A DNA stretch of 64,000 nt, taken from NCBI GenBank assembly GCA_001179505.1, contig CDMY01000332.1:1-64000 (forward strand), given 5' to 3'. The position numbers and the translations under genes are program-made. Origin of the DNA: Vitrella brassicaformis CCMP3155 (lineage: Eukaryota > Protista > Chromerida). Position 1 is the stretch's first letter; each line of letters starts with the position of its first letter. The notes beneath the pieces are model-generated. The model was not told where the DNA came from and made no database searches. It saw only the letters and a program-made list of their open reading frames with translations. Below are positions 15,977 through 42,743 of the stretch, piece by piece.

Positions 15977-18577
15977 ATGGTCATTCTGACTTGGAAATGG
16001 AGGAGGAAGGCCACATGCGCAATGTGCCTCGTGGGATGGCTCTGTCGCCTGCTGACGACGCCCATCTCGGCGCATGGGCGTGCATCTTCGCCTCTGGGCT
16101 TCGTCGCAACGACAGGCGGCCGGCCGACCAGGTGGCCGAGGCGGGAGCAGATGAGGAAGCTGATCTACAGGCGGAGATCTGCCGCTGCCATGACCACAGA
16201 CCGGCCCAGAAGACAAGCACATCAGGTGAGAAAGATGGGACAGACAGACAGACGCGTGTACATCACATCCATACCAAAAGGCTTTCACTGTGTCTGTCTG
16301 TTTGTCTGTGTGTTGTCTGTTCTTCTGTGTGTGTGCTGTGGCTGGACAGTCCCCACCGGTGGTCGACAAGAGCAACCGTCGAGCGATGCTCGAAGCGCTG
16401 ATGTCATCCTCTCTGGCCGTCACGGCAGCACTCATGGCCATGCAGCCCACAGCCGCATCAGCGGCATCAGCACAGGCCTCGGGCGAGCTCCTCACCTCTT
16501 CCTCATCGAACAGCGACAAGGATGTGTGTGTATCGTCGGCCGAGTCTGCCTGCCCCTTCATCTGTGAGCAACCACACACGCATCAGACCAGGCAGGCATG
16601 AGCATTCTCCTTGCGAGTGACACATCGCTCTTTCTCTTCTTCTCCATGATTGTGCAGCTATGGAGGAGCTGAATGAGATCAGTCGGCTGGCCGCTGCGGA
16701 GGTGCGGCGTGCGCCGAAGGGCATCGAGGCCGTCGAGCAGCCGCTCCCTGAGTTCTTCCCCGAGCTGACGAGTGAGGGCATGACCTGGCGCAAGGTCTTC
16801 GACTCGGTCAAGGGGGCCGACGTGCTCTACGTGGCCTCCGACACCTACTCTCCCTCCTTCGTCACATACATGGCGCGGTTCCTCCTAAACTACGATGACA
16901 CGTGTGCTGCCTGGTGGCGGCAGCAGCGGCTCACCACACAGGCCGTGGCGGACCCCTCTGAGCGGACCAGGATTCTGCTCAAGAGTTTTGGGGAGTTCTC
17001 GTCGTCTGTCGAGTATGGCTTGCGGCGTTACCGGGGCCAGGCGGGTGTCAACAACCTGCTCAACGTCATGATCCGGCGGTACGGTAACCGGCAGATCCCC
17101 GAGTCGCGACGGCAGCTGGCCCTCCTCTTCTCCCTACTCAGCCAGTACCAGCCCATCAACGCTATCACGGTCAGTCAGCGAGGGAGGCTCTCATGCATCC
17201 ATCGTGCGTCTGGTGTCTTGTTCATCATGCGTGCGTGACTGCAGGTGCTGTCCCGTGCCCTCCCGACCCGTCCAACGTTCGCCTTCTCGCCCTCCCCCGC
17301 GGGCATCCCCTCGCCGGTTTTTGCCAGCATGAAGGAGGAGGAGGGCTTCTTCCTCTCAGACCCAGTCGCGCTGCTCCCCGGAGGCGTCAACCCCATCTTC
17401 GACCTCGAGCTGCAGCGGTATCGTGTGAGCGGCCTGCTGGCCGACCCCAAGATGCTCCTCAGCTACCAGCTGCGCCGTGACGGCTCCGTCAACCTGGACC
17501 AGCCTGTCCTGACGCTGTTTGGGCCGCGGGGGCCCTTCCCCGTGACTCGCGAGAAGCCGCTTGACTGGTCGACCTACGCACTGTTCGCCACTGCTGGTGC
17601 GTTTGCGTGTTCGGCGACGCACGCAGCCGTGATCCCCCTGGATGTGGTCAAGACGAAGCGGCAGACCGACCCGGAACGATTTGACTCTATGGGTCTGATG
17701 CAGGGCGCCATCACCCTGGGGAAAGAGGAGGGCTGGCGCATGCTGCTGCAGGGGGCCCAGGCCACCATCCTGGGCTACCTCTGGTACGGCATCACGGTGT
17801 ACCCTGGCTATGAGTTCTTCAAGCGGCTGTTCGCTTCGCTGGCCGGCCCTGCGGGTGCCATCGAGTTCCGAGTGCCGCTGGTGCTGATGGCCGGTGCGGT
17901 GGCGACGGTCTTCGCTGCTGTGGGCGTCTGTCCGTGTGAGGCGGTGCGCATCCGGATGGTGGCTGACCCCAATTACGCCTCGGGGTTCCTCCCCGCCGTC
18001 CAGCGGCTGACCCGAGAGGACGGCCTGTTGAAGCTCTATGACGGCTTCTGGCCGCTGCTCATCCGGCAGGTGGTCTTTGGCATGATGAAGTTCTTTGTGT
18101 TCGACTCGTTTGCTGAGTTCCTCTTCGATGTGTTTCCGGCATTGGACGACACCACGGCCATGAGCCTGTCTGTGTCGGCCTTCTCGGGGCTGGTGGCCGG
18201 GGTGGCCAGCTCGATTGTGTCGCAGCCGGCCGACACGATTTTGTCGCGCATCAACCAGAGAGGCGGGAGGGAGAGCGCCTTTGAGGTGGTGAGGGACATT
18301 TTTGACAAGTGGGGGCCGCAGGGCTTCTTCTTTGGCCTCGGCAGCCGCTGCGTGTGGGCGGGGTCCATCATCGCCGGACAGTTCTTCCTCTATGACGTCC
18401 TCAAGGCTTCCTTTGGCGTCAGGAATGAAGACCTCATGCTGTCAGTGAGAGACACACTCACACACACACACGCACACGCAGTATCTCGTTCTCGCGTCTG
18501 CTCCTGTGTGTTGTGATTGATGTGTTGTGTTATGTGATGTCAGGTTCATGGATGTGCTGTCGGGGCTGCCGCAGTGA
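15977..18577 (+). CDS. Mitochondrial-carrier-family (phosphate carrier-like) protein with long N-terminal extension and probable plastid targeting; exons 15977-16225, 16350-16563, 16658-17169, 17245-18440, 18544-18577
   Basis: Three PX[DE]XX[KR]X[KR]-type signatures (PLDVVKTKRQ, PCEAVRIRMV, PADTILSRIN). PiC-like RQVVFGMMKF and GLGSR...GQFFLYD. The N-terminus has a hydrophobic signal, a GFV motif and an R/T/A-rich transit-like region. The start codon is inferred. Confidence 0.88.
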
Positions 18578-19335
18578 GTGAGAGGTCTGTACACACATGG
18601 CGTGGCGGCCACCGAGTGAATGCAATGCAGTGCGTGCTGTGGAGTGAGTGAATGAATGACGTACAGATTGTGGTGTGGTAGTGGGGTGGGTCCCGGGGGG
18701 GAAAGGGGGTGGTGGGGTGCAGCTGGTCGGATCATGAGTGAATGAATGAGGCTGAGTTGGTCATGTGTGAGTTTGTTGACGATGAACGGCTGCACGGGTG
18801 TGCATTCACTCATTGTGTTGTGTTTGGGGGGTGGGGTGGGGTGGCGTGGGATGGAGGGGGAGTGTCTGGCAACGATGTGCGCCGGACGGACAGACAGACA
18901 GACAGAGAGGCATAGAAATGAATAATGACAGCGATTGATGAGGGCATCCACGCACTCTGGTCCATACAGCACCAATCATGCGTACAGCCAACACACACAA
19001 CACATGCATCACTGTATCTGTCAGAGCAGACAGGCAGGCGGGCAATCTGATGGAATGAATGTGTCTGAGGCAGGCAGCACACGACAAGGGTGGCATATTA
19101 CACCACATCCTTGCAGACGGGCACATCCATGCAGGCGGGCACGGCAGTCAGGAGGGCAGTAAGGGGACATCAGGGAAGAGATGGGATCGATACATCCGCG
19201 TGTAAAAACGAAAAGACTTCTCCGTCTGTGGTCTTAGACCACCCCCCCCAGAGCATGATACACACCACCACGACAGACACCAAGCCAAACGAGCAGCAGG
19301 CAAACAAACAAGACAGACACACGATCGCGGTGGAT
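18500..19335. repeat. Direct duplication copy 1 (carrier last intron end + last exon + downstream ~800 bp)
   Basis: Aligns by eye with 27720-28612, e.g. tcaggttcatggatgtgctgtcggggctgccgcagtga and gcaggcagcacacgacaagggtggcatattacaccacatcc... are shared. Confidence 0.92.
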
Positions 19336-19813
19336 GAGAGCAGACATCCTGCTCCCAGACTCCTCCACCCATATGGCCCATACGGAGGGCAAACCGTTAA
19401 TGCTCTACCTGGTGGAAAACCGCTCTCTCTGTACGCTTCGAAGCCTATCCGATGCCAGTCGTATACGTAGTCACTATGCGCATGAGATCAGTGTCTATCT
19501 CTCCTCTGTATGTATGTATGCATGTGGTGAGCATGAATGGTGTAATGACGGGGTTGGCTGACGGGTGAGTCGTCCATTACATAATAGACCGCTCTGGTTC
19601 GTCTGTATGTCCGCTGCACACGTATGTGCACACCACCACACACACACACACACCACACGCACACAGACGTCCCGGCCGATCGTCATGTGCAATGTCTAGC
19701 CCAGGGTGCTTATCGATAGATATGCAGGCATGGCTATGTAGAAGCTAGATAGACAGGTGTATAAATGGACGATGGAAGGACACCATTTCAATAATCGTCA
19801 CGTGTCTAATTAG

Positions 19814-20952
19814 TCAGTCGTTTCTCGCCAGACGGGCCATGTACTCTTGAAGCTCATCAAACAGACGTGGCTCACTGCCATCAGTCCGCCCATTGCTCTC
19901 ATATCGGTCAATCAGGACGGCAGTGGCCAGTGCCTTCATGTCTCGAACGTCTCTTGTCAGCTCGGCCAACTCCTGCCTCATCTCACTTATCGCTGCCTGC
20001 ACGTCAGCTGCCTGGCTCTCCTGCGCCTCTATCCTCTCCGCCACGTGTTGGGTGGCGTGTATGGTCTTGTACAGCACGGTGGGCAGGTTGACGTACAGCG
20101 CCTTGTTGTCGTGGCCGCGGTCAACGCTGCTCTCGAACACCGCCTCAGGCCAAACACTTCTCACTTCCTCCGCCAGGACGCCTGACAGACAGGCAGATAG
20201 GCCCACTAAGCTCTCTTTGCTCATCAGGCGATAGGCGTCACTGACCAAATTGCCGCTGTCCTGCGTAAGGGATGCGTCTTCCCCTGTGCGTCTCATCCTG
20301 CGTTCTTCCGTCGTCGTTTTTCCATTGGAAGCTGTAGAAGTCAATCTTCTTGATGGCTTCCATCGCTGCCATTCCCCCCTGGGCAGTCTCCTTGCTGACG
20401 CGTGTCTTGTACCTGCCGTCGCTCAGCGCGCCATAGAACTGGCTGAAGAGGCCTCCAGCGTATATCTCGTACAGAGGAAAGTCAGTACCACACCCCAACA
20501 TGCCTGCAGACACACGGACACACACAACCAGCCATGTGTACTCCGTGTGCACTTTATTTGGTGATGCAGGCGCCCTCACCGTATCCCTGCAGGAGCGCAT
20601 TGTCAGCTTGCAGGTCGGCAGCCCCAAGAGATGGGTCGTCCCCTGAAGCCTCAGGCAGCACACGCACGCAATGAGCACACATACATCAAGCACGGGGAAT
20701 CGTTCGCCTACCGCACTGGAAGGTGGCGTATTGCCGCAGTGCGGCTCCTGTGCTGTTGTTGACGGCGGGCGCGCCGATGAGACCCTCCTTCGTGGGTGGC
20801 ACGTTGCCACCAGTGGGCTTCGAGAGCTCATCGATCTTCTCGCTTGGGGGTGGGAAAGGGAAAAGCTGTGGTGGGTTCGCCGCTGCTCGACGAGCCCAGC
20901 AACTTGATGCGACGAGGACGAAAAGTTGACACAGCTGCGAAGCTGCGAGCAT
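19814..20952 (-). CDS. Secreted protein with Peptidase S74 / intramolecular chaperone auto-cleavage domain and C-terminal coiled coil; exons 20952-20712, 20642-20580, 20503-20246, 20181-19814 (309 aa)
   Basis: Signal peptide MLAASQLCQLFVLVASSCWARRAAA. GMLGCGTDFPLYEIYAGG resembles tail-fibre G.VGIGT..P repeats. AL-SDGRYK..(MEAIKKIDFYSFQWK)..RQFGVLAEEVRSVWPEAV..LYVNLPTVLYKTIHATQHVAERIEAQE matches the SDxRxK...GxIAQEV..V.PEAV...coiled-coil pattern. Exon lengths sum to 930 nt with consistent phases. Confidence 0.82.
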
Positions 20953-20984
20953 CGTAGCGTACAGCCGTTCATTGTACACGTGTG

Positions 20985-21395
20985 GTCTTAGACCACCCCC
21001 CCCAGAGCATGATACACACCACCACGACAGACACCAAGCCAAACGAGCAGCAGGCAAACAAACAAGACAGACACACGATCGCGGTGGATGTTCACAGACC
21101 CTCAGTGATCTCACGCGCCATCCACCCCATCAGCAGCAGCGGTTTCAGGGAGCATCCTAGGTGGCCTGACGGCCAAGTCCCCTGTCGGTCTGTCCAACAT
21201 GAAACAGGCACCCTAACATGCAACCCGGACACGAAACACGCAGCACGCAGAGGGCAGATGCAGCAGACAGGAGGATATGCAATGCATAGGGCAGACCGTT
21301 AGCGGTTAGGTAAAACCGTTTTCTTCCCTCTTTTCTCCTGCCTGTCGTCTACGTAATCACTGTGCGCATGAGATCAGTGTCTATCTCTCCTCCGT
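20985..21395. repeat. Third, interrupted copy of the 19229-19505 segment, lying in the divergent promoter of the cassette
   Basis: gtggtcttagaccaccccccccagagcatg...cacgatcgcggtggatg is identical to 19229-19338. tcactgtgcgcatgagatcagtgtctatctctcctc matches ~19470-19505. Confidence 0.88.
21136..21154 (+). promoter_or_regulatory. Candidate telo-box-like promoter motif (GCAGCGGTTTCAGGGAGCA)
   Basis: Perfect 19-nt match to 28771-28789 (minus strand) and a 13-nt core match at 2648-2660. All three lie just upstream of start codons. Confidence 0.4.
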
Positions 21396-21396
21396 G

Positions 21397-24300
21397 ATGC
21401 CGAGTCGATTTAGATTGACTCTCGTGAGCACGTGCCTCTTCGCATTTCTACGCGCATGGCTTCTTGAACTTCGCGTGGCCGTCGACGCACAGTTCACAGC
21501 CGCCTGCGTATTTGGCAACAATCGCAAAGCAGAGGGAGCCACGAGAACAGCTTCAGCGGGACTGCCTTCCCGGTGGGTTAGTGAAGCACCGACATAAAAC
21601 GGGACATGCGTGTGTGTCGTTGTATGCGTGTGTGTGTGTGTGTGTCATTACAGAGGTGCCGCCGGCTGGCCTGAAGCTGTCGACGTGTTCCCCACACCCC
21701 CTGCTGTACTTCAGAGATGACGAAGGCGAAGAGAGGGCTTTGGGGCAGTGCGTGGCTGGTAAGTGAAGTCACGAACCGCTTCATTCACATCCCTATGTCT
21801 TCCCTTTGCAGAGGATGACCTGAAGAGACGACTGCGAACAGCACAGAAGAACGCCCTCGGTGTTCCTGTGAGCGCTACTGGGGAGGGCATTCTCTGCGGT
21901 GCTGTGGATGGCAACGGCGGCACGGCTGCTCTTTCTGTCTGCCCGCCGGACCGACCAATCTGTGCACGCTCCAGCGACCAGCGCTTCTGCTTCTGCCTTG
22001 CTGATGAAACAGGCGCGAAGAGCCACAATGCCACATCCAATCCCAACAATTGCATGTGCATTTGCTAATGGTGAGCTGAGTCGTCAGCCCGAAGGCACTC
22101 CATCGCTGGTCAGAGGCGTTCTTCAAGGCCAGCCATCCTCTCTCTGTTTCCCGCCTTCCCTCGACCCCTGCATCAACCCAGTCAATCCCTTCGCGCCCAA
22201 CCTCGACTGCTACGATGCTCTCGAGGTCGTGGAGATTGCCGACACGAGCGGCGTCGACCCTGCATCGCTCGCAATGGGCGACCACAACAAGAACCCAAGA
22301 GCGTTTTCGCAACTCGTGCCTGGGACTTATCTGATGGAAGACGTCAAGTCGGATGCTTGGGCGGATGCGATTGAGAATGTGGGCGACACGGACAGCTGCC
22401 TGCGCATCCAGGGAAGAATGGAGGACTCCGACGAGGACTTCTCCATCGATCTGTCATGCAACACGACTGAGGGTGTGTCTGCCATCCTCCCTTTCGACTG
22501 TCCTGACGTGGGCCTCTGCTCGGTGCGAGATGGCAACGTATTCAAACCTGCACTCGTAAGTGGGAGACATGATGGAGAGAAGAGATGGGTCGGCACCATC
22601 TTCATGCGCCTGATGCGCGTGCGTCGATTGCCTGATGTGTGTGCGTCGATCAGCTTGTGATTCAGGGCGTGTTGAAGGTGGTCAACGCCAGTGAGGCCGA
22701 CTGCGTCGGCCTTGAGGCGCAGATCGAGCTGACAGCGTGAATGCAAAGACAGCCTGAGGCATTCATAGGGCTCACTGCATGTTTCTTGCCTGTGTCTCTG
22801 TTTGTGTGCAGCACCGGATTGGTCGATGAAGCGATCTCTGGTCGAGCTCGCTCCGCCAACTACACAGCCGAGCAGCGAATCACGATCTTTGCTGAAGGAG
22901 AAGAGACAGAGCTCATTACCACACGTGGCATTGCTCTGGTCAGTCCAGCCGCCAACTCTGACTTGGGGCTGCTCACGTTTCCCAGCACGGTGCCCGCCGG
23001 CTGCCCTTCCCTGCTCAAGCAGCGCATCTTCACGATCACATCGGGCGACGTGGCGGCAGGCGGGGTGATCGCGGCCACTGCATCCGGATACAGTTACGAT
23101 CAGAACGACACTGTAGTCTCAAAGGTAAACACGTAGAAGCGAGGGACAGCACCTGCATTGCGATCCCCTTTCTGGTTTTGTCTGCTGCATGCAGAAAGTG
23201 TTTGAGGTCGAGATAGGCTCTGGCAAGTCTGCCGATTTCAACGAGGTCTGCCGCGAGGCGGCTGAAGAGGATCGCATTTCCGCAGAGCAGGAGCGGCTGG
23301 TGACTGAGCAAGCGGCGATAGGTGTGGACCCTTCTCGTGCATTGGTCGGCATCGAGGCACCCTCTCTGTGGTTCCCGCTTTTCAAGACAGGCCCAAGCCC
23401 GTTCTTCCCCCTGTTCAATGCGCGAAGGGTGGCACGCTATTCGGTGACCAGGGAATTTAACCCCGATGAGATTGCGGACGAGTTCGGCGTTACTGACCGA
23501 GACCGAGAGCAGTCGAAGATCTTCTTGTGGAGAAGAGTGTTTGATTTCATATCTGTTCAAGCCGACATCAGTCGGCCTATAAGCTATGTCCAGATCTTAT
23601 GTGCCGAGAACGTGACGGTTCTACCGGTGACATTCAAGCTGGAGAATCTGGAGACGGGCAGCTCTCTCGATCTCATCCTCAAGGCACAACTGGGCTCCTT
23701 ACTCGACCAGGATGCAGGCGGTGAGACAGAGAAAACACCCTTCTGGAGCCATCCGTTTGCAATCGTTTTTTTTGTTTGTTCATGCTCAGTTTATGTTGAG
23801 TGCCGACGCCGTGTGCTGCAGACTCTCCCAGTTGGCTTCGCCGACACATATCAAATCCCTGGCGGCCTCACAGCAGGCTCGATCGCTGCTGTTGGAGTCG
23901 ATCCTAAGGTGTGGGCGCTCGGAGACAACGTGTTCGTGGACGTGCTGATCAAAGACGGAGAAGGTGGATCCACCACGACGTCACTGAGAGATGAGGGGAT
24001 TGTTGCTAATCTCCAACAGCACAACTGCATCGGTGTGACAGAGACCAAGCAGAGAGAAATCAGCGCGACGGTGTTGGTGTACGAGAGACAAGAGGAGGGC
24101 AATCGGGCCAGCGAGGAGGTCATCTTGGACACGACCTGCGAGATCGGCTTCGAATGCTTTGCAGCGTGTCCCGAGCCCAGGTTGCCGGTCTCCAGCCCCG
24201 CGGCAGTGCAGAATAGGACGTATCAGCTTCTCGATGCACCCTTCAGAACTGCAACGTCAGAGTGGACTATTACATCTGGCACAATGGAACCAGCTCGTTA

Positions 24301-27300
24301 TTCTTCTGGACCTCTTCCTCTGTTCGATTCTCGTTACGATACGAGAGGATGTACTGACAATCGCTTTACTGATTCAAGCTGCACGAGGACCGTCGATGAG
24401 AAGATCTATAGCTGCGCGCCCGACCAAGGGACGGGCATCGGCGTGCAAGTGAAGGTCGAGTACGATTCAGCAGCACTCGATAGCAGAATCACCCATGGCT
24501 TCTTTGAGCCCTTGGCGTTGGCGAATGTCTTCATCAAAGGGGCGGTCTGGCAAGTCTATCCCCCTGAATGCGCAGGTACTTAAGCCGTACGATGATTCAA
24601 ATATATGTGGATCAGCTTATCCTCTGTTTTCTTCTGGTAGAACAGGCAGCATTGTCTTTGTCGAAGGTAGCGGATAGCGTGGGTGACGGCAGGAAACCGT
24701 CTCTGCTGTGCCGTGATTTGATGCAGGCGATCTTCTTGTTGGAGTGGGCTTTCAAAACAACTTCATACAGCCACAAGAAGGCCGGGGTTACTTTGGAGAT
24801 GAGGTCAACACTCAGCTCGATGATTTGATATTTGCACGGGGGCAAGAGGGGCAAGAGGGGCTTCATTTCGGCATTCCAGAGGCGCTGCTGACTTCAAGCG
24901 TGCGGCTGATGAAGGTGGAATACACTCTACTGAGTCTTGCTGAAGAAGCGACGATTGAAGCATGCTTCAACGCAAACAAGTCCAGAAAGGTCTCAACGAA
25001 GGATCTTGTCTTTCATCCGGACGGCCAAACAAAAACAAAGATCTCATACTTTGATGTGTCTCGATTTAACGGTGATCTCCAGGTAGGCCGTGTATGTGTG
25101 TGCACTGATTGCAGGGACTTTTTTTGTTACTCTTGCATATGCGTATTTTGCAGGAGATCCAGTCCGAGTCTTTTGGTGCTCCACTGCTGAACGATGATGA
25201 GCTTGGGCTTAAGTCTTTCTTGCACATTGACTCGAATATCGAAGGCGACATATTTAGCCTGAGTTCGTCTGTATTACTCGGCAACCTTACCAACTTCTGC
25301 GACGAGACCAACAAGAGTGAGCAGGCCACACGAGCATGCAAGCGATCGTGTTTCTCTGCCACTGTATTTGCCTGCGTGAATGTGTACGCTCCAGTTTTGA
25401 TTCAGTGCCAACCTGCGAAGCGGCTGCAGCTCGTGGCAGACCATGGATCGAGGGCTGCTGATGATGAACTTGTCAACTCCATCGCAACTGTGGTGTCATC
25501 AGGCGCTGGCTTTGACTACATTGCCAATCTCACCGCCCCTCCGGGCTTTGATTTGTCGTGCAACATCAGCGAAGCATCGGAGATTTTTCGGCTGACAATG
25601 TCGAACAGAGAGGGTGGACACCTCGTGTACGCCGACACGGCGTACATCGACCATGACATTCAGAATTATCTGATTCGTACTGTGCCGTTGAGTGTTGGCT
25701 TTAGAAGAGCGAATGGGGAGACGGGAAAGGTAGACGCCCTCTGTCCTGTGGCAATCGACTGCTGTAAGGAAACATAGGGAAACATCGGCTAAGAACACCA
25801 CTTATTTCTTGTGTGTCCGTGAATGTGTATCAGTGCTGCCGGAGAGGGCACCACGGCCTGTTTTCGACCCAAGTCCTGACAACACGTCCATTGCGAGACC
25901 CCCCCGGCCTCCGGCTTCTACACCGCTGCCCGGGAGAGATGATTTCTGTCCAGGTAGCTTCAAGGAAGCAGACAGGGCCTTGTAGCAAGGGACGGTTACC
26001 TTTTCCTCTTCCCTTTTTAGAGCCGCTGCTCTTCGAAGCAGCGGGCAATCTCTCAACACTGCAGGACCTGCGGCTCCCCACCGGTCTACATCCCCACGTC
26101 ATATGGAATGCTCGATCTATCAGTCCCTTCATTGTTGTGGCGCTAGACGCCGGAGAGGATGGGGTTGCCACCCTATCAGTTGTGGATCTCTTAATATTCG
26201 GCAATCGTGTCATTGGGGAGTAATCCGTGACCTGCTAAAAAAGAAAGAGGCTTCCTGTGTCATGATTAATACACATGTGCTGCAGGGAAAGAGTGACTGT
26301 CGAAGCCGTATCTGATTTTACATCTGGTACCTTCGAGTTGGTCGTCGTAGTGCTGACACGAAACATCAATGGAGCTGCTGACGGCATCGGCATACAGGTA
26401 TATGACGATAGAAGCAAAAGAGTCACACGAAACTGGCTGGCTTCTTCGTGCCCTGCCTGTCCTCCAGGCCTTGTGTGTCAATGGCCCATGCAATGCCAAG
26501 TTGGTTGTATTTGAGCACACTGGCGATTGCATTCCAAGAGCAGTCGATGGGAAGGTGTTCGGTGTGAGTGAGACTATCGACTTAGAGGCTCTCCCGCTTC
26601 TCCCTTCTCCTCCGGCGCCTCCAGGAGGTCGTCTGCCGAGACCGTGCCCAGGCAAGCGCAGGAAATACACTACTGCACACATGCCTGCTTGGAATACGTG
26701 CAGGTTCCCTTTTGGGCCCAATCAACGGCTCGCTGGAAGCGGGGAACCCGACGAGCATTGATAGTATATCTGGTCCTTTTCCTGCTTGCTTCGTCATCGT
26801 GGCTTTGGATTCACTCACTATGGGTGATAGTGACTTATTCGTATACAACCCGTCCACAGGGTAAGGAAAGGTAGCAGTTGGTGTGCAATAGACTGAATGA
26901 TGCATCCGTACAGGGACGGCGTCATTAGCGATAAAAAAAGTGATGGTATAATAGATAGTTACGAGGATGTGGTGGTGGTTGATGTCTGTGCTTTTGGAGG
27001 GAGTTTTTCCTTTGGTGTGAGCGATCGCTTCAATGCCACTCTAAGGCGGAAAAGAATGCTATGCGTGCTCTTCTTTCAGGTGTCATGTTACTCCGGGCCT
27101 TGTGAATGGGTGCGCATTGAATGCGTAGCAAAGAGAATACCTTTGTTGCTATATTTCCTCTCCTTTGTTTCTTGCAGGAACTTATTCCTTTCGATCATGA
27201 CGGCAATTGCATGCCCTCGCTGCCTTACGGGGTGAAAGTGATTGGGATCGATACCAAAATCGATCCGACACTTCCTGTTTTCCCAGGACGCTGACAGCTA

Positions 27301-27426
27301 CACGCTGAGTCTTCTGCTGTCAAGAGAGTCTTTTACAAGTAGTGAGTTTGCGTGCGTGCATGTGATTTTTCCCTATTTAAGAATCTGCACCTCAACACAG
27401 ACATCGAGATGGAATTCCCTCTTTGA
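21397..27426 (+). CDS. Very large (roughly 1400-1500 aa) secreted Cys-containing, beta-rich protein of unknown family; about 20 exons, some boundaries uncertain
   Basis: Signal-like MPSRFRLTLVSTCLFAFLRAWLLELRVAVDA. Long ORFs (21899-22660, 22741-23136, 23189-24583, 24744-25190, 25109-25777, 26369-26761) are each bounded by splice sites and can be chained in phase to a TGA at 27424-27426. Many N-x-S/T sequons. Confidence 0.72.
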
Positions 27427-27719
27427 GTGGGCGACACACGCACATGCAATTATACATGTATGTGAGGAGAGCTGTGGGCTATGGACTGTGGTGCTGTATG
27501 CGCGTAGTGGCGCCACCTGCGTCAGTCAATGCACCTGTTCTCAGACACAATAGATCTATGCTCAGACCTCCCCCTGTCGTCCACCCAACCAAATGTCGTT
27601 CACATACATGGATTGACGAAGGTATGGAGTCCATCAAGCCATACAGTGACAACCATACCTTACCGAGAACCACTCTCGCCTCTCTCTTTCTCTCTCTCTC
27701 TCTGTCTGTGTGTGTGTGT

Positions 27720-28612
27720 TGTGATTGATGTGTTGTGCTGTGTGGTGTCAGGTTCATGGATGTGCTGTCGGGGCTGCCGCAGTGATGGAATGGCACACAC
27801 ATGACGGACGGCCACCGAGTGAATGCGATGCATGCCGTTCCGTTCCGTGCCGTGCTGTGCTGTGGAGTGAGTGAATGACGTACTCATAAGTACAACCAAT
27901 ACATCATTAAATGTGGTGTGGTAGTGGAAGGGGAGGGGGTGGGCTGGTGGGTGTGCAGCTTGTCGGCTCGTGAGTGAATCAATCGATAAGCCTGAGTCCC
28001 GTGCGTGTGTGGGTGGGTGAATGCAATGCAATGCAATGTGTGAGTTTGTTGAGGATGGACGTGCAAGATGGCTGGATGGCTGCGAGGCTACACCACCTGG
28101 GTGTGCATTCAGTCTTGGTGTTTGGGGAGTGTCTGGCAAGGATGGACGCCGGACAAAAGACAGACAGACAGATAGACAGACAGAGACAGAGACAGAGGCA
28201 TTGACAGGGATGATTGATGAAGGCATCCACGCAGTTCTGGTCCGTCCGTACAGCGCCAACCATGCGCACAGCCAGCCAACACACACAACACATGCATCAC
28301 TGTATCAGTCAGAGCAGACAGGCAGCCGGGCAATCTGATGGAATGAATGTGTCTGAGGCAGGCAGCACACGACAAGGGTGGCATATTACACCACATCCTT
28401 GCAGACGGGCACATCCATGCAGGCGGGCACGGCAGTCAGGAGGGCAGTAAGGGGACATCAGGGAAGATATGGGATCGATGCATCCGCGTGTAAAAACGAA
28501 AAGACTTCTCCGTCTGTGGTCTTAGACCACCCCCCCAGAGCATGATACACACCACCACGACAGACACCAAGCCAAACGAGCTGCAGGCAAACAAACAAGA
28601 CAGACACACGAT
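27720..28612. repeat. Direct duplication copy 2, including an orphan copy of the carrier terminal exon (FMDVLSGLPQ*)
   Basis: Matches 18500-19335 with substitutions and microsatellite length changes. No upstream carrier exons precede it. Confidence 0.92.
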
Positions 28613-28799
28613 GACAGCAAACACACAGGAGGCATGCTCGGTGTGTGCGTGTGACAGAAAATTCACAGAGACACACGCATATATACAATCACCCCTACGC
28701 AAAAGCCACAGATATGCACTGGTTTCTTCGACTTTCTTCGACCGTTTAACTTTCTGTTTCACCGAAACCCTGCTCCCTGAAACCGCTGCGACTCACACC

Positions 28800-35041: not shown

Positions 35042-36330
35042 TTAGTAGCCCATGTTGTGTCGCACGTCCCGCGCCGTGTCTGTGATGCGCAGCCGCCCCA
35101 GTATGCACCGCAGCTCGTGCAACACCGCTGTTTCGATGCCATGCTCGAGCGGGTTGTCATCGGGCGGTGGCGGCAGGGGGTGGGCGGCCAGGAGGGGGGC
35201 AATGATGTGGTTGAGCTCCTTGTTGGTCAGGTCATACTGCTGTGGCACCTGCCCCCCGTTGGCCTGGCTCACGCGGAGCCCGAAGAGGGCACAGCGGTTC
35301 GTGTAGAGGTAGTGGCGCTCGGCAACCTCTGCAGTGTTCTGGCACTGACACGCACACACACACAGTGAGACACACAATTGTGTCATTCAAGTGTCATTGT
35401 CCCTGCTCATTGCCCGTGGTCTGTGTGTGTGTGTGTGTGTGTCTGACGGATGGCGATGATTTGCTGGAATAGCAGCTGCTTGAAGTTGTTGTCCATCCGA
35501 CGCGCCCTATTGACCAGCCTGGTGGTCTCTGCCCGTCTCTGCTGGGCCGTCATGCCACTGTCGTAGAGGTGACGATTCACCCCCCTCATCGCCGACGATT
35601 CACCCCCCTCATCGCCGCCCGTTGCGCATTGTTGAGCCCAAACACCTGCCGGAAGAAGAACCTCCTCGGCACCTGGGTGTCTGGGCCCTGCGCCATCCTA
35701 ATGAAGAGCACCCCGCCAAGGTAACGCCACATGATCTTGCGCGTCCCCTGGGCGAGCTGTGGCTGGCGGGGCAGGGCAGCGATGATGAGGCGGGCGATGG
35801 GCACACCGACGCAGCAGAACCACACGTATAAACGAGAGCGCAGCTCTGATAGACAGTGTTGTGTGTGACGACTGTTGTGTGTCCCATCCATAAGTGGAGA
35901 CCTACCATGGCAGGGTTGCGGCCGCCATACGTGGCATATCGCGTTGATAAATATCCGCTCATAACTGACCAAGCAACAAAAGCCATGCGCAAAATGTGTC
36001 AATCTCTGGGCAATGAGCTTCTTGAGTGCATACTTCCATTGCGCATCTTGTCCGATTGTGTTGCCGTTGGCCTGCAAGTAGTCGACTATGTCCATCACGT
36101 AGTGGGCCAGGATGATGGTAACGTGCTGCATGCAGACCGGCAAAAAGGGAAGAACACACATCAATAAGTCAAGCATGAAAGACATGGCGCATTGGATCAT
36201 CCATCCATCTGATAAGTGACGCTCAATGACCGGGCATCGTGACGCTGTGTGGGCGAGGGCGACAGCTGTTGAGCTCTACGGTATCAGCAAGAGCGACAAA
36301 GGATGGAGAGTAGGTCACCAAGAAGAATGG
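35042..36330 (-). pseudogene. Disrupted gene: in-frame TAG in the first exon plus a 23-bp frameshifting tandem duplication
   Basis: Frame HPLSLLLIP*SSTAVALAHTASRCP|HVTIILAHYVMDIVDYLQ... runs to RAAMRGVNRRR*, while the shifted frame resumes MRGVNRHLYDSG. The duplication is at 35571-35616. Confidence 0.6.
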
Positions 36331-36627: not shown

Positions 36628-37460
36628 CTAAGGCGTTGACTGTTTTCTGATGTCACTGACAAGCCTCTCTCCGAGCGCTGACAAAGACGACAGTAAATGA
36701 AGTCTGCATGCTGGAATGAAGAACCTCATACAGGGTGGAACAAATACTGAGCGCTGGATGAGGGATGTGAAGGCCTCATTGTCCTTTCTCGTGGCATAGA
36801 GGCGTTCCACAAGTTGAGGGTCTTCGGCGAGTGCGATAGCAAGCTGGTCGTACTCGCCGTTGCCGTATTCGGAGGTCGATTTTACCACATGAAGCACTGT
36901 CTTGAGCCTGTCGCTTGTCCCGCTCGTGTCGCTTTCGCTCGGCATCATCACCAAGGTGTCATGCCCTCCCCCTTGGCCCGTACTTGGTGCGAGATGAAAT
37001 TGTGCAGCTCCTGGTTCGTCTCCTCGTATCGCTGCATCACCGTCCGGAGGGTGGCGGGGTGCAGGTCCTGTTCCGGATGGCGGGCTAGGCTGGGCGGCAG
37101 TGGTGTCAAGTCTTCCTCCTCTTCTAGTGGGCCAGGATGATGGTGAGTTGCTGCATGAGAGACCGGCACAAAGGCACACACGAGAGACTGCCTGAATAAG
37201 TGGATAAGTGACGCTCGATGACTGACCTCATTGGTGTGGTGGTGCCTAGCACTGAAGTCTATCAGATGCCCATAAATCTCCCTATGATCAGGAAACAGCA
37301 GCCAGCGACCGCAATCGGCATCGCGCCCTCATGCGTCTTGCATCCGGCAGCGGACCGGCCATATGTGACGCTGTGTGGGCGAGGGCGACAGCTGTTGAGC
37401 TCACGAGTGTCAGCAAGAGCGATAAAGGATGGAATAGGTCACCAGAGGGATGATGCCGAA
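36628..37460 (-). pseudogene. Diverged paralog of the 35-36.3 kb locus sharing only the 5' module; probably decayed
   Basis: 37125-37450 aligns with 36100-36330 (gtgacgctgtgtgggcgagggcgacagctgttgagctc; gtgggccaggatgatggt). It has an ~150-nt insertion and TAG where the paralog has TAC. Confidence 0.45.
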
Positions 37461-37825: not shown

Positions 37826-40474
37826 TCAAGGGTACTCGCGGAACTCGACCGAGTCCGACCGGTAGATGGTGGGCGGCAGCTGCCACGAGTTGCCCGGTTC
37901 CCAGTAGATGTCCAGATGTCTGGCAACAAGCACGGACAGCAACACATCCATCCATCCATCCATTCACTCATTCGTCCATGGAAGTGTGTGTGTCGTCTTA
38001 CGCGTAGATGTCGGGCTTGTATGTCACGTAGGACATGGGCGAGATGCAGTTGAGAGTCTGTGGCGTGGCAGTGGCACCTCCACGTCCCCCCTTCCACAGG
38101 GGCGCGAGCCCCTTGGCGCGCAGGTCGTTGAGCACACGATGGACGTCTTTCTGGTCCGTGAAGTCCCTCGTGTGCACACCGAGCATGTACAGGCGGCGAC
38201 CTCGGTCGTCCTCCTTGGGCTCGACGGTGTGCTTGGCAGCTGGGCCGAGCTTCCCCTCGCTGTGCAAATCGATCGCGCGAGCACAGGCCGTGCGCAGGTT
38301 GTTCTCTCCATCTGGGAGAGGGCAACAACAGAAACGTATCCACATATGTCATCGCATCAGACAGATGCACTTTTCTTGAGGTGCAGCCAGGCCAGCTCGT
38401 CTGTCCGACCAAAATGGAGCATCCATTTGCCGGCCACGCACCCCATCTCGGCCGCCAGCTGGAGGAGCCTCTCCTTGATGACGGTGTTCTTGCCGCCGTG
38501 CGCTTGGTCCGTCAGAATCTGCAGACCCCTCGACTGGATCTTGGCAATGTCATAGTGATTCTCTCCCGTCGGCTCGTTCCACAGATAGTGATACTGAGTG
38601 TCGCGCTTGTGTTTGGCGCCTTGAGATGGCTGGCCAGCGGGCGGGTGCGATGGATGGGGAGGGCAGGATGGAGCGCGCCTCTTCTCGGTCTCTCGAGACA
38701 ACGCTGAGCACAAACCACAAACATCACACAAGACCACACCACACCCATGACACCACATCCATCCATCCACCCACCCGCCGCCCAGGTACCTGAGTGCTTG
38801 ATGCCCGCCTTCTGCTGCTGCTGCTGCTGCTGCTGCTGATGGGTGCGGTCAGCCCCAGCGTTGATCTCCCTCATCAGCTGCATCGCCAGGGCGTGGTCGG
38901 CTTCCTCCTGGCGCTTGCGGCAAAGCTCTTCGTCCGTCATGGAGGCATCCAGGTCCATGGCGGTGGGCTGGGAGGGACCTGCCGGCGCTGCGGCCGCTGC
39001 AGCAGATGCCGATGCGCTCACGCCGGATGAGGTGGCGCCGGCTGTGGTCTTGGCGGCCTTGGCCTGCTTCTCGCCCTCCTCCTTGCGCTTCAGGTACTCC
39101 TCGTCTGTGAAGTCGTTGGAGCTGTACTGCGTCACGGGCGACAGGCGCAGATCCGCCCACGTGCCTGTGTTGCCAGAATACACGTCCAAAATCCTGATCA
39201 ACCAACCAATACACACACATGCGCAGCGCACAGAGAGGGAGGGAGAGCGCACAAAGCACAGCACAGCACAGCACAGCACGTGAGTGAGTCGGTATATGCG
39301 GTGCATGGGTTCCTGCTGGCTGCCGTACGTACGTCAGCAGATCGAGCTTGTAGCGGACTCGTTTGTTGCCCCTGAACTCCTCACCACCACCGCCGCCGCC
39401 CTGCTGCTGCTGCTGCTGCTGGTGGTCATCTCCAGGCGTCCCGTCGGCCACCACACCGATCTTGCGGAGGCCGTTGAGGACGCGCTTGACCTCCTGCCGG
39501 TCGCGGAAGTCGGGACTGTACACACAGATGACGTACATGGGGCCGCTGGGCCTCAGGGCGCACTTGGAGCAGTTGCCCAGCTGCCCCTGGCTGGTCGCCA
39601 ACGCCACACGACGCCACGCCTCATCTATCATGTCATCACCTGCAGTGCAATGCATGCATGCATCAGCATCACACGGACGCACGGACGGACGGACGGACGG
39701 ACGGACGGACGGCAACACCACAAGACACAGTAAGTAACGTCCATCAATGCATTGCAAAGAGGCCTTCCTTCCTTGCTTCCTTCCTTGCCTCCTTGCTTCT
39801 GTCTTTCCTTCTCACCCACCGAAGTAGAGGAGCCACTTGCCGGTGACGCACTTGGTGTCGATGGCCAACTGCGTCAGTCGCTCCAGGGTCTCCTTGCGAA
39901 TCACCCCCCTCTTGGCCCCGGGCTGCTTGAGCTTCTCGCGACAATCGAGCAGAATGGCCTCGCCTCTGGCCTCGATGGCCTTGACCTCCTGCTCCGAGAA
40001 CTCAGGCTCAGGCTGGCCGCCGTCATGCCGCACCAACCGCCACCTGCCACGCAGCGTCTCGTGCACCTGATGGCTGGCGCGTGTGCTGCTGGGGTTGGCC
40101 AAGGGCAGATGCGATGAATGGTTGCCCCTGGTCGGGGGGGGTCGGGCCTGCTGCTGCTGCTGCTGATGGGTGCGGTCAGCCCCAGCGTTGATCTCGCCCG
40201 ACAGCTGCATCGCCAGGGCGTGGTCGGCTTCCTCCTGGCGCTTGCGGCAACGCTCCTCGTCCGTCATGGAGGCATCCAGGTCCCTGGCGGCGGGCTGGGA
40301 GGGACCTGCCGGCGCTGCGGCCGCTGCAGCAGATGCCGATGCGCTCACGCCGGATGAGGTGGCGCCGGCTGTGGTCTTGGCGGCCTTGGCCTGCTTCTCG
40401 CCCTCCTCCTTGCGCTTCAGGTACTCCTCCTTTCTGCGCTTGCGGATCTCAGCCAGCTGAGATTCTGAATCCAT
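37826..40474 (-). CDS. Protein with two DUF1917/UPF0696 (C11orf68-like, eIF4E-like fold) domains; exons 40474-39820, 39639-39333, 39193-38790, 38703-38371, 38311-38002, 37919-37826
   Basis: Domain 1: CVTGKWLLYFG..EAWRRVA..GQLG..KC..YVICVYSPDFRDRQEVKRVL..RYKLDLLTILDVYSGN. Domain 2: CVAGKWMLHF..GKLG..LGVHTRDFTDQKDVHRVL..TYKPDIYAHLDIY..NSWQLPPTIY. All exons join in frame. Confidence 0.85.
38822..40429. repeat. Near-identical ~280-bp internal repeat (38822-39102 and 40148-40429)
   Basis: Both copies encode EEYLKRKEEGEKQAKAAKTTAGATSSGVSASASAAAAAAPAGPSQP...EEADHALAMQL..EINAGADRTHQQQQQ with only a handful of substitutions. Confidence 0.95.
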
Positions 40475-40616: not shown

Positions 40617-42743
40617 ATGCGGCTGCGGGAGCGGGAGGATGCGCCCCTTGACGTCCTCGACCCATCCTATCTCCGGCACATCACCGACGCAGATGACCTT
40701 TCATCCGTCCGGAGCGTCGAGCTGTGCGTGGATGTGGACGAGCAGCCCATCGCCGAGTTGGGGGAGCTCCTGCCCTCTCTGCGTCACCTGCGGCTCAATG
40801 GGTCCAACGTGCCGTCGCTTCGGGAGCTGGGCGTGCGGTTCGGCTGTTTGCGGGTGCTGTGGCTGACGCGCTGCGGAGTGAGGGATCTGGGAGGGGTGCA
40901 GGGGCTGCCTGCACTGCAGGAACTCTATCTGGCGTTTAATGCTATCGAAGAGCTCTGGCCGCTGGCAGGTGCGATGGATGAATGAATGCACTCACCCCAC
41001 ACACACAGACACAATCACACACATACGCACATACACACACACATACACACGCATCTCCGTTCCCTGTGTGTGCATGGTTTTTGCCGTCTGTCCATCCGTC
41101 AGGCCACGAGTGTCTGGAGGTTCTCGACCTCGAGGGCAATGAGTTGCGGTCGTTGCAGGAGGTGACCTTCCTCACATCATGCCCGGCTCTCAGACACCTG
41201 ACCCTCCAGGCCAACCCCCTCACACACGACCCCGCCTTCTCGCCCCAGTGGGTGGCCGAGCGGCTGCCACAGCTGCAAACCCTCGACGACGCCCCGCTGG
41301 GCAGCAGGAGCGGGCTGCTCGAGGTGGAGGAGGTCGGCGAGGAGAGCGAGGAGAGGCAGCAGGAATCGGAGCCTGACGAGTGGGACGAGGTGCCGTCTGG
41401 CCGTGGTGTTCCGGTGCCGACTTATGCGCGAGGGCATGAGGTAGAGGTGCTCGACCTGTCGCAGCTCGACGCCATCGAGGAGGAGAACGAGGAGGACAAT
41501 GGTCCGATGGGTGGCCCCTCGGGCGGTGGCTTCTCGTCTGGGTCGTGCAACCCTTGCCTGTCGGCCATGCCCCCTCTGGAGTGTCTAGTGTCGTCTCCGC
41601 GGCTGAGAAGGATGAAGGCCGACGTCGAGAGGGATATGGGCAGGGAGGGCGATGCGGCAGAATCGGCCGCAGCTGGTGGTGCGGTTCGTGGTGGCGGTGA
41701 TGTGTTTCCTGGTGAGCCTGCGGAGGAGGAACTGCTCGTTGAGAGCATCAAGGTGAGTGGGGTAAGGGTGTCTGACGATGGACTTGCGCGACTCGAGAGG
41801 TTCTTTGGCTTGGTTGGGTTGATTCAGGCGTGTCGGAGCGCTGCTGCCACGGTGTCAGCTGCCTCATCCAGCAGCGCATCGCGGGCGTCACACCGCCCCA
41901 CATCGGCTGCAGCACTCAACCAGAGGACGCACATGCCATCCAGACCCCGTAAGTTGACAAACCGAGACCACTGGACATCCTGTGCGCGTGTATCTATCGC
42001 TGCCTGCCACTGTCTGCATCCTTCAATTCAGAGAGCGCGGCGTCCCACCACGGGCCCTTCCCGGTCCCCCCTCCCCTCTCCCTTCGCCGCCCCTCCACTC
42101 CAGCCGTCCCGCCCCCCTCGCTCGTGTATCATCACCGGCCTGCATCGGACTTCGGCTGGGTGGCCGACGAACAGCATGGTGCGGCCGACAGCGGTGTGTC
42201 AGACCTCACTGTCGGCACTGATCGCAGCTTCGCGGGCAGCCCCTTGGCGGCTATCCGCCACAGTAGACAGAGGAGCACGCAGAGTGCGCGTGTTGGGGAG
42301 AGGGGGAGGGGCGGTGGTGGTGCCGGCGGTGTGTTGGGCATCCGTGCACTGATGGCTCAGGTGCGGCTGGAGGCGGCCACGACCATGAGTGCTGAGGAGA
42401 GGGAGTGGATGAAGCAGCAGCAGAGGCAACACAGTAGACAAGTACGAACGGCCAGCGGCACCTTTACACATGCATAGAGTGTCATCAAACGGGTGTGTAT
42501 CTGTTTTCTCAGCATCGTCGCATCGTGACGCCTCCCGCCCCCTCCCAGGCCCCACAGCCGCCATCCACGCCCAGCGACTCCGCATTCGTCCGCCGCAGAG
42601 TGCCGAGTTGTCGTGTTCATGGCGCTGCCGCGGAGGAAAGCAAGGAGGGCGGGCTGCGCGTCAATGAGGCGGAATGTCACAGTGCCGGCAGCACAGCGGC
42701 CACCAGGGCGCCCACGAGTGCCCAGAGCAGTGGGGTGGGGTGA
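40617..42743 (+). CDS. LRRC56: LRRC56-like leucine-rich-repeat protein (ciliary dynein assembly/transport factor family); exons 40617-40968, 41103-41752, 41828-41948, ~42031-42441, ~42512-42743
   Basis: LGELLPSLRHLRLNGSNVPSLRELG...LRVLWLTRCGVRDLGGV..LPALQELYLAFNAIEEL..L..HECLEVLDLEGN..L..CPALRHLTLQANP, plus the later SDLTVG...GSPLAAIR motif. 3' boundaries are approximate. Confidence 0.82.

What the first reader, a model, noticed from the sequence alone, without database searches (positions are those of the whole stretch)
19814..27426. Candidate two-component secreted fibre/surface system: S74 protein head-to-head with a giant secreted protein
Both genes have signal peptides, start 445 bp apart on opposite strands, share the atypical cassette composition and lie together between the duplicated flanks. 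Hypothesis: a co-regulated module in which the auto-processing trimer is a fibre, tip or folding helper for the large beta-rich protein, forming an extracellular appendage, wall or extrusome component. I know of no described system like this in alveolates.
Basis: inference. Interest (0 to 1): 0.85.

Follow-up and report, generated by a model that had tools for sequence, protein, structure and literature searches.

The report
Vitrella S74 gene beside secreted-protein gene
This is one of three diverged copies of a gene cluster specific to the alga Vitrella, in which a small secreted protein with a phage-type self-cleaving "S74" domain lies head-to-head with a ~1,100-residue secreted protein; the "giant" gene is really two genes, and nothing yet shows that the neighbours work together.

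Summary
The window is Vitrella brassicaformis. The S74 gene (CDS 19814-20952, minus strand, 4 exons, 309 aa) is confirmed by two intronless transcript contigs that match the window at 100% (L008) and 97-100% (L007). It has a Pfam S74 hit and an SDGRYK motif. Its ATG lies exactly 445 bp from the ATG of a plus-strand gene at 21397. Direct repeats of about 850 bp flank the block.

The "giant" gene is two genes:
- **Big gene (21397-25777):** an 11-exon, 1,110-aa ORF from a Vitrella-only family of at least 10 secreted, cysteine-rich paralogs.
- **Third gene (25834-27294):** a homolog of a separate ~340-390-aa secreted-protein gene. Here it is inverted and lacks its own 5' exon.

The trio recurs at two other Vitrella loci at 67-78% nucleotide identity, so the adjacency is inherited by segmental duplication. 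One of those copies has a decayed S74 gene. At least seven more distant paralogs of the big gene have no S74 neighbour. Head-to-head pairs are ordinary in this genome (20 of 53 neighbouring pairs), and the intergenic DNA is not conserved between copies.

Functional coupling is therefore untested. No transcript of the window's big gene was found. Both structure models were unusable. Interest is moderate to low.

The parts
18496..19345 (.). Left copy of the flanking direct repeat. It lies within the 3'UTR of the S74 mRNA and begins about 20 bp before the end of the upstream mitochondrial-carrier ORF.
   Evidence: the repeat finder; alignment; transcript L007 extends to 18857; carrier Pfam hit
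19262..21241 (-). S74 transcription unit as covered by the transcript contigs. Exons are 20711-21241, 20579-20643, 20245-20504 and 19262-20182 (L007 reaches further, to about 18857).
   Evidence: Intronless contigs matching the window with GT-AG gaps: L008 at 100%, L007 at 97-100%
19814..20952 (-). S74 coding region: 309 aa with a signal-peptide-like N-terminus, a ~108-aa pre-domain, the SDGRYK cleavage motif at residues 129-134, the chaperone domain and a helical acidic tail.
19934..20423 (-). Coding span of the S74 / C-terminal intramolecular chaperone domain, interrupted by the intron at 20183-20244.
   Evidence: Pfam PF13884 covers P0001 residues 79-152. PHROG tail-fibre C-termini cover residues 76-220. 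Mapped through the exon coordinates.
20981..21090 (.). Third copy of a 110-nt element, 100% identical to 19227-19336 and about 98% identical to 28515-28612. It lies inside the S74 5'UTR.
20953..21396 (.). Divergent intergenic region between the two ATGs (444 bp). The S74 mRNA 5' end reaches at least 21241, leaving at most 155 bp to the big gene's ATG. It has no detectable similarity to the equivalent regions of the paralogous clusters.
21397..25777 (+). Big gene. An 11-exon model with canonical GT-AG introns of 60-369 nt gives an uninterrupted 1,110-aa ORF with a signal-peptide-like start, a QFTAAC motif and 2.8% Cys. It belongs to a Vitrella-only family.
25834..27294 (+). Homolog of the separate 'third' gene, which is 344 aa at L001 and 386 aa at L002. 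It is inverted here relative to both paralogous clusters, and its signal-peptide exon was not found. Either a truncated relic or spliced onto the big gene.
27704..28632 (.). Right copy of the flanking direct repeat.

Best explanation
The region is one copy of a three-gene segmental duplicon specific to Vitrella brassicaformis. It is not a two-gene system with a giant partner.

**Gene 1 (minus strand).** A 309-aa protein with this layout: signal peptide, a ~108-residue N-terminal piece, then a phage-type S74 C-terminal intramolecular chaperone domain with the Ser-Lys motif SDGRYK, then a helical tail. By analogy with the family (inferred, not shown), it would enter the secretory pathway, trimerise through the S74 domain, and cut itself at Ser129. 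That would release a short trimeric N-terminal piece.

**Gene 2 (plus strand, 21397-25777).** A ~1,110-aa secreted, cysteine-rich protein from a family of at least 10 members found only in Vitrella. The fold is unknown. The most likely role is a disulphide-bonded extracellular or wall/surface protein (inferred).

**Gene 3 (25834-27294).** A copy of a ~340-390-aa secreted-protein gene. A local rearrangement has inverted it and removed its 5' exon, so it now sits on the same strand behind gene 2. That is why the DNA can be read as one 6-kb gene.

**Arrangement.** The head-to-head placement arose once and was copied with the whole block. The two promoters share at most ~155 bp plus the big gene's 5'UTR, so some shared regulation is possible. 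Physical or functional coupling of the products is not shown.
For: - **Organism and family.** All homologs of both genes are V. brassicaformis CCMP3155 proteins or Vitrella transcript ORFs.
- **S74 gene.** It is spliced and transcribed: L008 matches the window at 100%, L007 at 97-100%. Pfam S74 scores E 1.5e-10 over the full profile. Residues 76-220 match the last ~120-130 positions of several phage tail-fibre PHROGs, with E down to 3.9e-12. The SDGRYK motif is conserved in paralog P0010.
- **Big gene.** Exon and intron positions are shared with paralog gene models. An 11-exon ORF of 1,110 aa has no internal stop. Homology to full-length paralogs ends at 25762, near their C-termini. A signal peptide plus QFT.AC motif is shared across the family.
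- **Third gene.** It is separate and convergent at L001 and L002, with its own signal peptide. It is inverted in the window, and its 5' exon was not found there.
- **Duplication of the whole block.** Nucleotide identity to L001 and L002 is 67-78%, and introns align at 47-85%. dS is similar for S74 (0.59) and the big gene (0.69), with omega 0.35 and 0.29.
- **Ordinary arrangement.** 20 of 53 adjacent annotated gene pairs are divergent, with gaps of 63-2509 bp.
Against: - No transcript or annotated protein of the window's own big gene was found in the 266-1732 aa range. Its expression and true 3' end are therefore unknown.
- A frame-compatible splice from the donor at 25764 into the third-gene region exists, so a fused product cannot be excluded.
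- One 5' exon shared with distant paralogs (a Cys-rich module) could not be joined by a canonical intron. The 1,110-aa model skips it, as annotated paralog model P0016 does.
- Both AlphaFold models were unusable, with pLDDT 29.8 and 42.4. Trimerisation, cleavage and the fold of the big protein are inferred, not shown.
- Signal peptides were judged only by hydropathy and conservation.
- Retention of an intact, constrained S74 gene next to the big gene in two of three copies is also what a functional pair would show.
Confidence: 0.7

Rival explanations
1. A true functional module. The S74 protein and the big protein (perhaps with the third protein) are co-expressed from the shared divergent promoter and assemble outside the cell. 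The S74 trimer would act as an anchor, tip or in-trans folding aid for the large protein.
For: - The S74 mRNA 5' end lies at most 155 bp from the big gene's ATG.
- All three products carry signal-peptide-like N-termini.
- The trio is kept together at three loci.
- S74 and the big gene are both under purifying selection since duplication.
Against: - Adjacency is inherited with the duplicon.
- In L002 the S74 copy has lost the catalytic motif and carries frame disruptions and stops, while its big gene is still annotated.
- L009 and L003-L006 paralogs lack any S74 neighbour.
- The intergenic DNA is not conserved.
- Known S74 domains act in cis on their own polypeptide (established knowledge of the family).
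- There is no sequence similarity among the three products.
- No transcript was found for the window's big gene although S74 transcripts were.
Confidence: 0.17
2. A relic of foreign DNA, viral or bacterial. The block would be a domesticated fragment of an integrated virus or transferred island, which would explain the phage-type S74 domain, the lower GC and the flanking repeats.
For: - The S74 domain is otherwise typical of phage tail fibres and occurs in giant algal viruses (PMC13659346).
- GC is 53.9% inside the repeats against 59% outside.
- Direct repeats flank the block.
Against: - All three genes have spliceosomal GT-AG introns at positions shared between copies.
- No capsid, polymerase, integrase or transposase domain was found in the block.
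- No relative was found in IMG/VR, GenBank phages or GTDB genomes. The nearest metagenomic hits are only 26-30% identical.
- The paralogous clusters match the GC of their surroundings.
- The big family has at least 10 dispersed host-like members.

Ancient transfer of the S74 domain alone remains likely, but it does not make the block an element.
Confidence: 0.08
3. An LTR-type or other mobile element, with the 850-bp direct repeats as its terminal repeats.
For: - Direct repeats of about 850-930 bp enclose about 8.4 kb.
- The block is multi-copy.
Against: - The repeats are absent from the other two copies of the block and from all other fetched loci.
- There are no gag, pol or integrase domains.
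- The left repeat is simply the S74 3'UTR.
- Identity is uneven: 98% in the last 360 bp and indel-rich elsewhere.
- The 110-nt core of the repeat recurs in the S74 5'UTR, which points to local duplication.
Confidence: 0.03

Closest known systems
C-terminal intramolecular chaperone domain (peptidase S74, PF13884) of phage endosialidases and tail fibres, for example K1F endosialidase and the T5 L-shaped tail fibre
   Same: - Pfam match over the whole profile.
- Matches to the C-terminal ~120-130 positions of phage tail-fibre PHROGs.
- Ser...Lys motif SDGRYK at the start of the domain.
- A long helix after the domain (low confidence).
   Different: - Encoded by a nuclear gene with three spliceosomal introns and a signal peptide.
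- Only ~108 residues precede the cleavage serine, against hundreds to more than 1,000 in fibres.
- About 40-50 residues follow the region matched by the phage profiles.
- No PDB chain is detectable by sequence.
- Cleavage and trimerisation are untested.
MYRF / MrfA-type eukaryotic ICA (S74) proteins
   Same: A eukaryotic protein that uses an S74-type domain, which in MYRF mediates trimerisation and self-cleavage (established knowledge).
   Different: - No NDT80 DNA-binding domain.
- No transmembrane segment after the domain.
- It has an N-terminal signal peptide instead, so the topology and logic differ.
S74-domain proteins of giant algal viruses, for example HaV53_86 of Heterosigma akashiwo virus (PMC13659346)
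   Same: An S74 domain in a protist-associated setting. In some versions it is attached to large adhesin-like or beta-helical regions.
   Different: - There the S74 domain and the large region lie in one polypeptide.
- Here the large protein is a separate gene on the other strand and shows no adhesin domain.
- No viral relative was found.
Lineage-specific secreted cysteine-rich gene families and divergent (bidirectional) gene pairs in compact alveolate genomes (Woo et al. 2015, PMC4501334)
   Same: - A Vitrella-only family of at least 10 signal-peptide proteins of ~1,100-1,250 aa.
- Head-to-head spacing of a few hundred bp is typical of the genome.
   Different: This particular family is uncharacterised. 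It has no Pfam, NCBIfam, PHROG or PDB match.

Membership tests
Peptidase S74 / C-terminal intramolecular chaperone domain (PF13884) | Profile match above the curated threshold | tested here: met
   P0001 (the window's own spliced product) scores 41.7 bits against a cut-off of 22, E 1.5e-10, profile positions 1-57 of 58. Paralog P0010 scores 41.4 bits.
Peptidase S74 / C-terminal intramolecular chaperone domain (PF13884) | Catalytic Ser with Lys five residues downstream (S-D-x-R-x-K) at the start of the domain | tested here: met
   SDGRYK lies at residues 129-134 of the 309-aa protein and is identical in P0010. The motif definition comes from established knowledge of the family.
Peptidase S74 / C-terminal intramolecular chaperone domain (PF13884) | Domain sits at the C-terminal end of a long trimeric fibre or beta-helix passenger | tested here: not met
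   Only ~108 mature residues precede the serine, with no repeat or fibre domain. PHROG matches are confined to the chaperone part.
Peptidase S74 / C-terminal intramolecular chaperone domain (PF13884) | Trimerisation and autoproteolysis | not testable with these tools
   Needs protein-level data.
Peptidase S74 / C-terminal intramolecular chaperone domain (PF13884) | Three-dimensional fold of the chaperone domain | tested here: inconclusive
   The AlphaFold model has mean pLDDT 42.4 from a 3-sequence alignment. Fold search was not run because the model is unreliable.
MYRF-type membrane-tethered transcription factor | NDT80 DNA-binding domain before, and a transmembrane helix after, the S74 domain | tested here: not met
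   No NDT80 hit. No hydrophobic 19-mer in P0001 or P0010.
Vitrella big secreted cysteine-rich family (unnamed; P0003, P0005, P0008, P0011, P0012, P0014, P0015, P0016) | Signal peptide followed by a QFT.AC motif, ~1,100-1,250 aa, conserved cysteines, shared intron positions | tested here: met
   - The window starts MPSRF... and carries QFTAAC.
- phmmer scores E 7.8e-166 to 3e-10 against seven representatives.
- Intron positions are shared with P0015, P0003 and P0016.
- Invariant Cys columns are present.
Co-regulated two-gene module | Adjacency conserved beyond what common descent of a duplicated block explains | tested here: not met
   S74 neighbours occur only in the three copies of the duplicon. 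They are absent at L003-L006 and L009. One S74 copy has decayed.
Co-regulated two-gene module | Correlated expression | not testable with these tools
   S74 transcripts were found in two samples. None was found for the window's big gene. The metagenome collection does not hold those transcript contigs, because the positive control failed, so the negative scan says nothing.
LTR retrotransposon or integrated virus | Hallmark genes (gag/pol/integrase, or capsid/polymerase) between terminal repeats | tested here: not met
   No such Pfam hit on any ORF of the block. The repeats are not found around the other copies.

The most novel reading that the evidence does not exclude
A eukaryotic extracellular assembly in which a phage-derived S74 mini-protein, reduced to a signal peptide, a ~108-residue stub and the self-cleaving trimerisation domain, acts on or with a separate large lineage-specific secreted protein made from the same divergent promoter. 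That would be an S74 chaperone or anchor working between polypeptides rather than within one.
Probability: 0.1. Interest if true: 0.75.

Novelty: new variant of a known kind. Interest (0 to 1): 0.33.

Why it matters
S74 domains are known from phage and viral fibres and from MYRF-type transcription factors. A spliced, transcribed, signal-peptide-bearing S74 protein with almost no passenger is an unusual architecture in a free-living relative of apicomplexans. It suggests the self-cleaving trimerisation module has been re-used for something other than folding a fibre.

The neighbouring ~1,100-aa protein belongs to a Vitrella-only family of secreted cysteine-rich proteins with no recognisable domain. 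That family is a candidate for wall or surface biology.

If the neighbours did cooperate, it would be a new kind of secreted assembly. On present evidence the locus is mainly a useful correction: two genes were read as one, and the linkage comes from duplication.

Tried and rejected
- **Structure, big family.** Paralog P0015 with an 11-sequence alignment gave pLDDT 29.8, which is unusable.
- **Structure, S74 protein.** A 3-sequence alignment gave pLDDT 42.4, also unusable. Fold search was not run on either model.
- **PDB sequence or profile searches.** With the big-family alignment, P0001 and the S74 alignment: no hits even at E 1-10.
- **Domain searches.** Pfam, NCBIfam and PHROGs on big-family proteins, and Pfam on third-gene exons, found nothing credible.
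- **S74 relatives elsewhere.** GenBank phages (tblastn), IMG/VR and GTDB genomes: none.
- **Metagenome scans.**
  - The scan for the big gene's largest exon found nothing.
  - A control scan with the S74 protein did not recover the known transcript contigs, so that negative is uninformative.
  - The control scan did find two distant prokaryote-type S74 ORFs at 26-30% identity.
- **Third-gene CDS.** Enumerating GT-AG introns to rebuild the annotated third-gene CDS gave too many solutions. I used conserved open segments instead.
- **Spliced models.** They were tested only inside scripts (length, stops, splice sites). The joined sequences were not sent to any search or folding tool, and searches were made exon by exon or with database paralogs.
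- **Rfam and tandem repeats.** Nothing relevant.
- **Literature.** No paper on S74 proteins in chromerids.


Full report
**Organism and setting**

The window is eukaryotic: 58% GC, with short GT-AG introns. Every homolog of the two genes comes from Vitrella brassicaformis, either CCMP3155 genome proteins or Vitrella transcript ORFs. That genome is compact, at 72.7 Mb with 22,817 genes and little transposon content (PMC4501334). The gene to the left of the region, at 17245-18516, is a mitochondrial carrier.

**The S74 gene**

The raw minus-strand ORF gives a Pfam S74 hit. The search with its last exon returned P0001, a 259-aa ORF identical to the window.

P0001 comes from two JGI contigs, L007 and L008, on which the ORF is uninterrupted. 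Aligned to the window, L008 matches at 100% and L007 at 97-100%. The alignments break into blocks at 20711-21241, 20579-20643, 20245-20504 and 20182 down to 19262 (L008) or about 18857 (L007). These contigs are therefore spliced transcripts. The gene is real, has four exons and is expressed in two samples.

The full ORF runs from ATG 20952 to the stop at 19814-19816 and encodes 309 aa. The spliced product shows these features:
- **Pfam.** PF13884 scores E 1.5e-10 over the whole profile.
- **PHROGs.** Residues 76-220 of P0001 match the last ~120-130 positions of several phage tail-fibre families, with E down to 3.9e-12.
- **Motif.** The domain begins with SDGRYK, the Ser...Lys spacing expected of this self-cleaving family. 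Paralog P0010 has the same motif.
- **Passenger.** Only ~108 residues lie between the predicted signal-peptide end and the serine.
- **Other architectures.** There is no NDT80 domain and no transmembrane segment.
- **Structure.** The structure model was poor at pLDDT 42.4. PDB sequence searches were empty.

**The 'giant' gene is two genes**

The largest open segment, 23129-24580, found seven representatives among 1.84 billion proteins. All are from Vitrella. A further search added P0015 and P0016.

Full-length members are 1,171-1,251 aa. They start with a signal peptide followed by a conserved QFT.AC motif, have ~3% Cys and lack a membrane anchor. The window's gene starts at ATG 21397 with the same motif.

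Exon boundaries of the annotated paralogs map onto the window with conserved GT-AG sites. An 11-exon model from 21397 to 25777 gives an uninterrupted 1,110-aa ORF. One cysteine-rich exon near the 5' end is shared with distant paralogs but could not be joined by a canonical intron. The model skips it, as the annotated paralog P0016 does.

Homology to full-length paralogs stops at 25762, which is 15-60 residues from their ends.

Beyond that point, 25834-27294 matches a different gene. That gene is annotated as 344 aa at L001 and 386 aa at L002, and it lies convergent to the big gene at both loci. In the window it is in the opposite relative orientation. The L002 copy has its own signal peptide. 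The corresponding 5' exon was not found anywhere in the window.

A splice from the donor at 25764 into this region would keep the frame for about 120 codons. A fusion therefore cannot be excluded, but nothing supports it. By homology the stop is at 27292-27294, not 27426.

**Linkage elsewhere**

At CDMY01000429 (L001) the order is third gene, big gene (P0015), a fragment of an S74 last exon (P0002), then an intact S74 gene (P0010, 315 aa). At CDMY01000130 (L002) an unannotated S74-like stretch lies head-to-head with the big gene (P0003), followed by the third gene.

Nucleotide identity to the window is 67-78%, and introns align at 47-85%.

Between the window and L001:

| Gene | dS | dN/dS |
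|---|---|---|
| S74 | 0.59 | 0.35 |
| Big gene | 0.69 | 0.29 |

This pattern fits one duplication of the whole block followed by purifying selection on both genes.

The L002 S74 copy has no S-D-x-R-x-K motif in any frame. It shows at least one frame change within what is a single exon in P0010, and stops within the aligned pieces. I take it as decayed.

The next-closest big paralog (P0016, L009) and the more distant ones at L003-L006 have neither an S74 gene nor a third gene beside them.

Several distant paralogs have transcript-derived ORFs. None was found for the window's own big gene in the 266-1732 aa range.

**How unusual is head-to-head?**

Among 53 adjacent annotated gene pairs in the fetched Vitrella loci, 20 are divergent, with gaps of 63-2509 bp and a median near 300. 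A 445-bp head-to-head pair is therefore ordinary in this genome.

The S74 mRNA reaches to at least 21241, leaving at most 155 bp before the big gene's ATG. The promoters must therefore be very close or overlapping. Even so, the 444-bp intergenic sequence shows no similarity to the equivalent regions of L001 or L002 at word size 7.

**Flanks and composition**

The direct repeats are real but local. They are absent from all other fetched loci.

The left copy is part of the S74 3'UTR. A 110-nt piece of the repeat recurs in the S74 5'UTR. A 61-nt piece of the 3'UTR is 90% identical to the sequence just upstream of the big gene's ATG. These point to local duplications around the S74 gene rather than element termini.

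No mobile-element or viral hallmark domain occurs in the block.

The GC difference is modest at 53.9% against 59%. It does not apply to the S74 gene itself and is not seen at the paralogous clusters.

**Interpretation**

The best-supported reading is a lineage-specific three-gene duplicon. Adjacency of the S74 and big genes is inherited. The S74 protein is an unusual, minimal, secreted version of a self-cleaving trimerisation module. The big protein is an uncharacterised secreted cysteine-rich protein. The third gene has been rearranged in this copy. Functional coupling remains possible (I give it about 0.1-0.2), but it has no positive evidence.

**Limits**

- Signal peptides were not run through a dedicated predictor.
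- Both structure models failed.
- Joined spliced models were checked only for length, stops and splice sites inside scripts. They were not sent to search or folding tools.
- The metagenome collection lacks the transcript contigs, so says nothing about expression.

Noticed in passing
window 19227-19336, 20981-21090, 28515-28612; also about 19453-19512 against 21339-21399: A 110-nt element occurs three times: in the S74 3'UTR, in the S74 5'UTR and in the right flank. A 61-nt stretch of the S74 3'UTR is 90% identical to the sequence just upstream of the big gene's ATG. The 3'UTR looks like a compressed relic of the divergent intergenic region.
   Followed up: partly
L007:1709-2255 against window 28067-28612 and 18857-19336: The 3' end of transcript contig L007 matches the right repeat (98.9%) better than the left repeat that actually follows the S74 gene. 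L007 also has 3 mismatches in its first 532 nt, whereas L008 is 100% identical throughout. This could be a strain difference, gene conversion between the repeats, or a chimeric assembly.
   Followed up: partly
L001:7647-8264 (P0002) and L001:10001-11204 (P0010): The paralogous cluster carries an extra, separately annotated 151-aa fragment. It is 97% identical to the last exon of the intact S74 gene 1.7 kb away, which indicates a recent local partial duplication.
   Followed up: partly
L001:6968-7593 and L002:9442-10001: Public gene models P0015 and P0003 appear truncated at the N-terminus. Homology with the window and with P0016's signal-peptide exons continues several hundred bp upstream of their annotated starts. 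The L001 third-gene model also seems to lack its signal-peptide exon, because homology to L002 starts at L001:772.
   Followed up: partly
window 21805-22014: An open segment encodes a cysteine-rich module (C..C..C.C pattern) that is conserved with distant paralogs. UniProt labels one paralog 'thyroglobulin type-1 domain-containing'. In the window no canonical intron links this segment to the next exon, and annotated models of the close paralogs skip it.
   Followed up: partly
window 25834-27294; L001:876-2442; L002:14530-16232: The third protein seems to consist of two tandem modules, each with three recurring motifs: F-V/I-I/V-V-A-L-D, Y-E-x-V-V-V-V and G-P-C-E-F/W ... H-x-G-N-C. It has no Pfam match.
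   Followed up: partly
window 17245-18516: A mitochondrial carrier gene (three Mito_carr repeats, E 3.6e-43) whose ORF end overlaps the start of the left repeat.
   Followed up: no
window 38821-39109 and 40148-40436; 36239-36307 and 37365-37433: Two further pairs of direct repeats elsewhere in the window: 289 nt at 96% identity spaced 1327 bp apart, and 69 nt at 91% identity spaced 1126 bp apart. Their nature is unknown.
   Followed up: no
window 61044-63020 and 40982-42352: Two ORFs with domain hits: a nucleotidyltransferase (NTP_transf_2) domain and leucine-rich repeats. These are ordinary neighbouring genes.
   Followed up: no
L010:487-885: A metagenomic prokaryote-type contig carries a 132-aa ORF that is little more than an S74 domain (Pfam E 3.2e-13), next to a methyltransferase. 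It is another example of an S74 domain with almost no passenger.
   Followed up: partly
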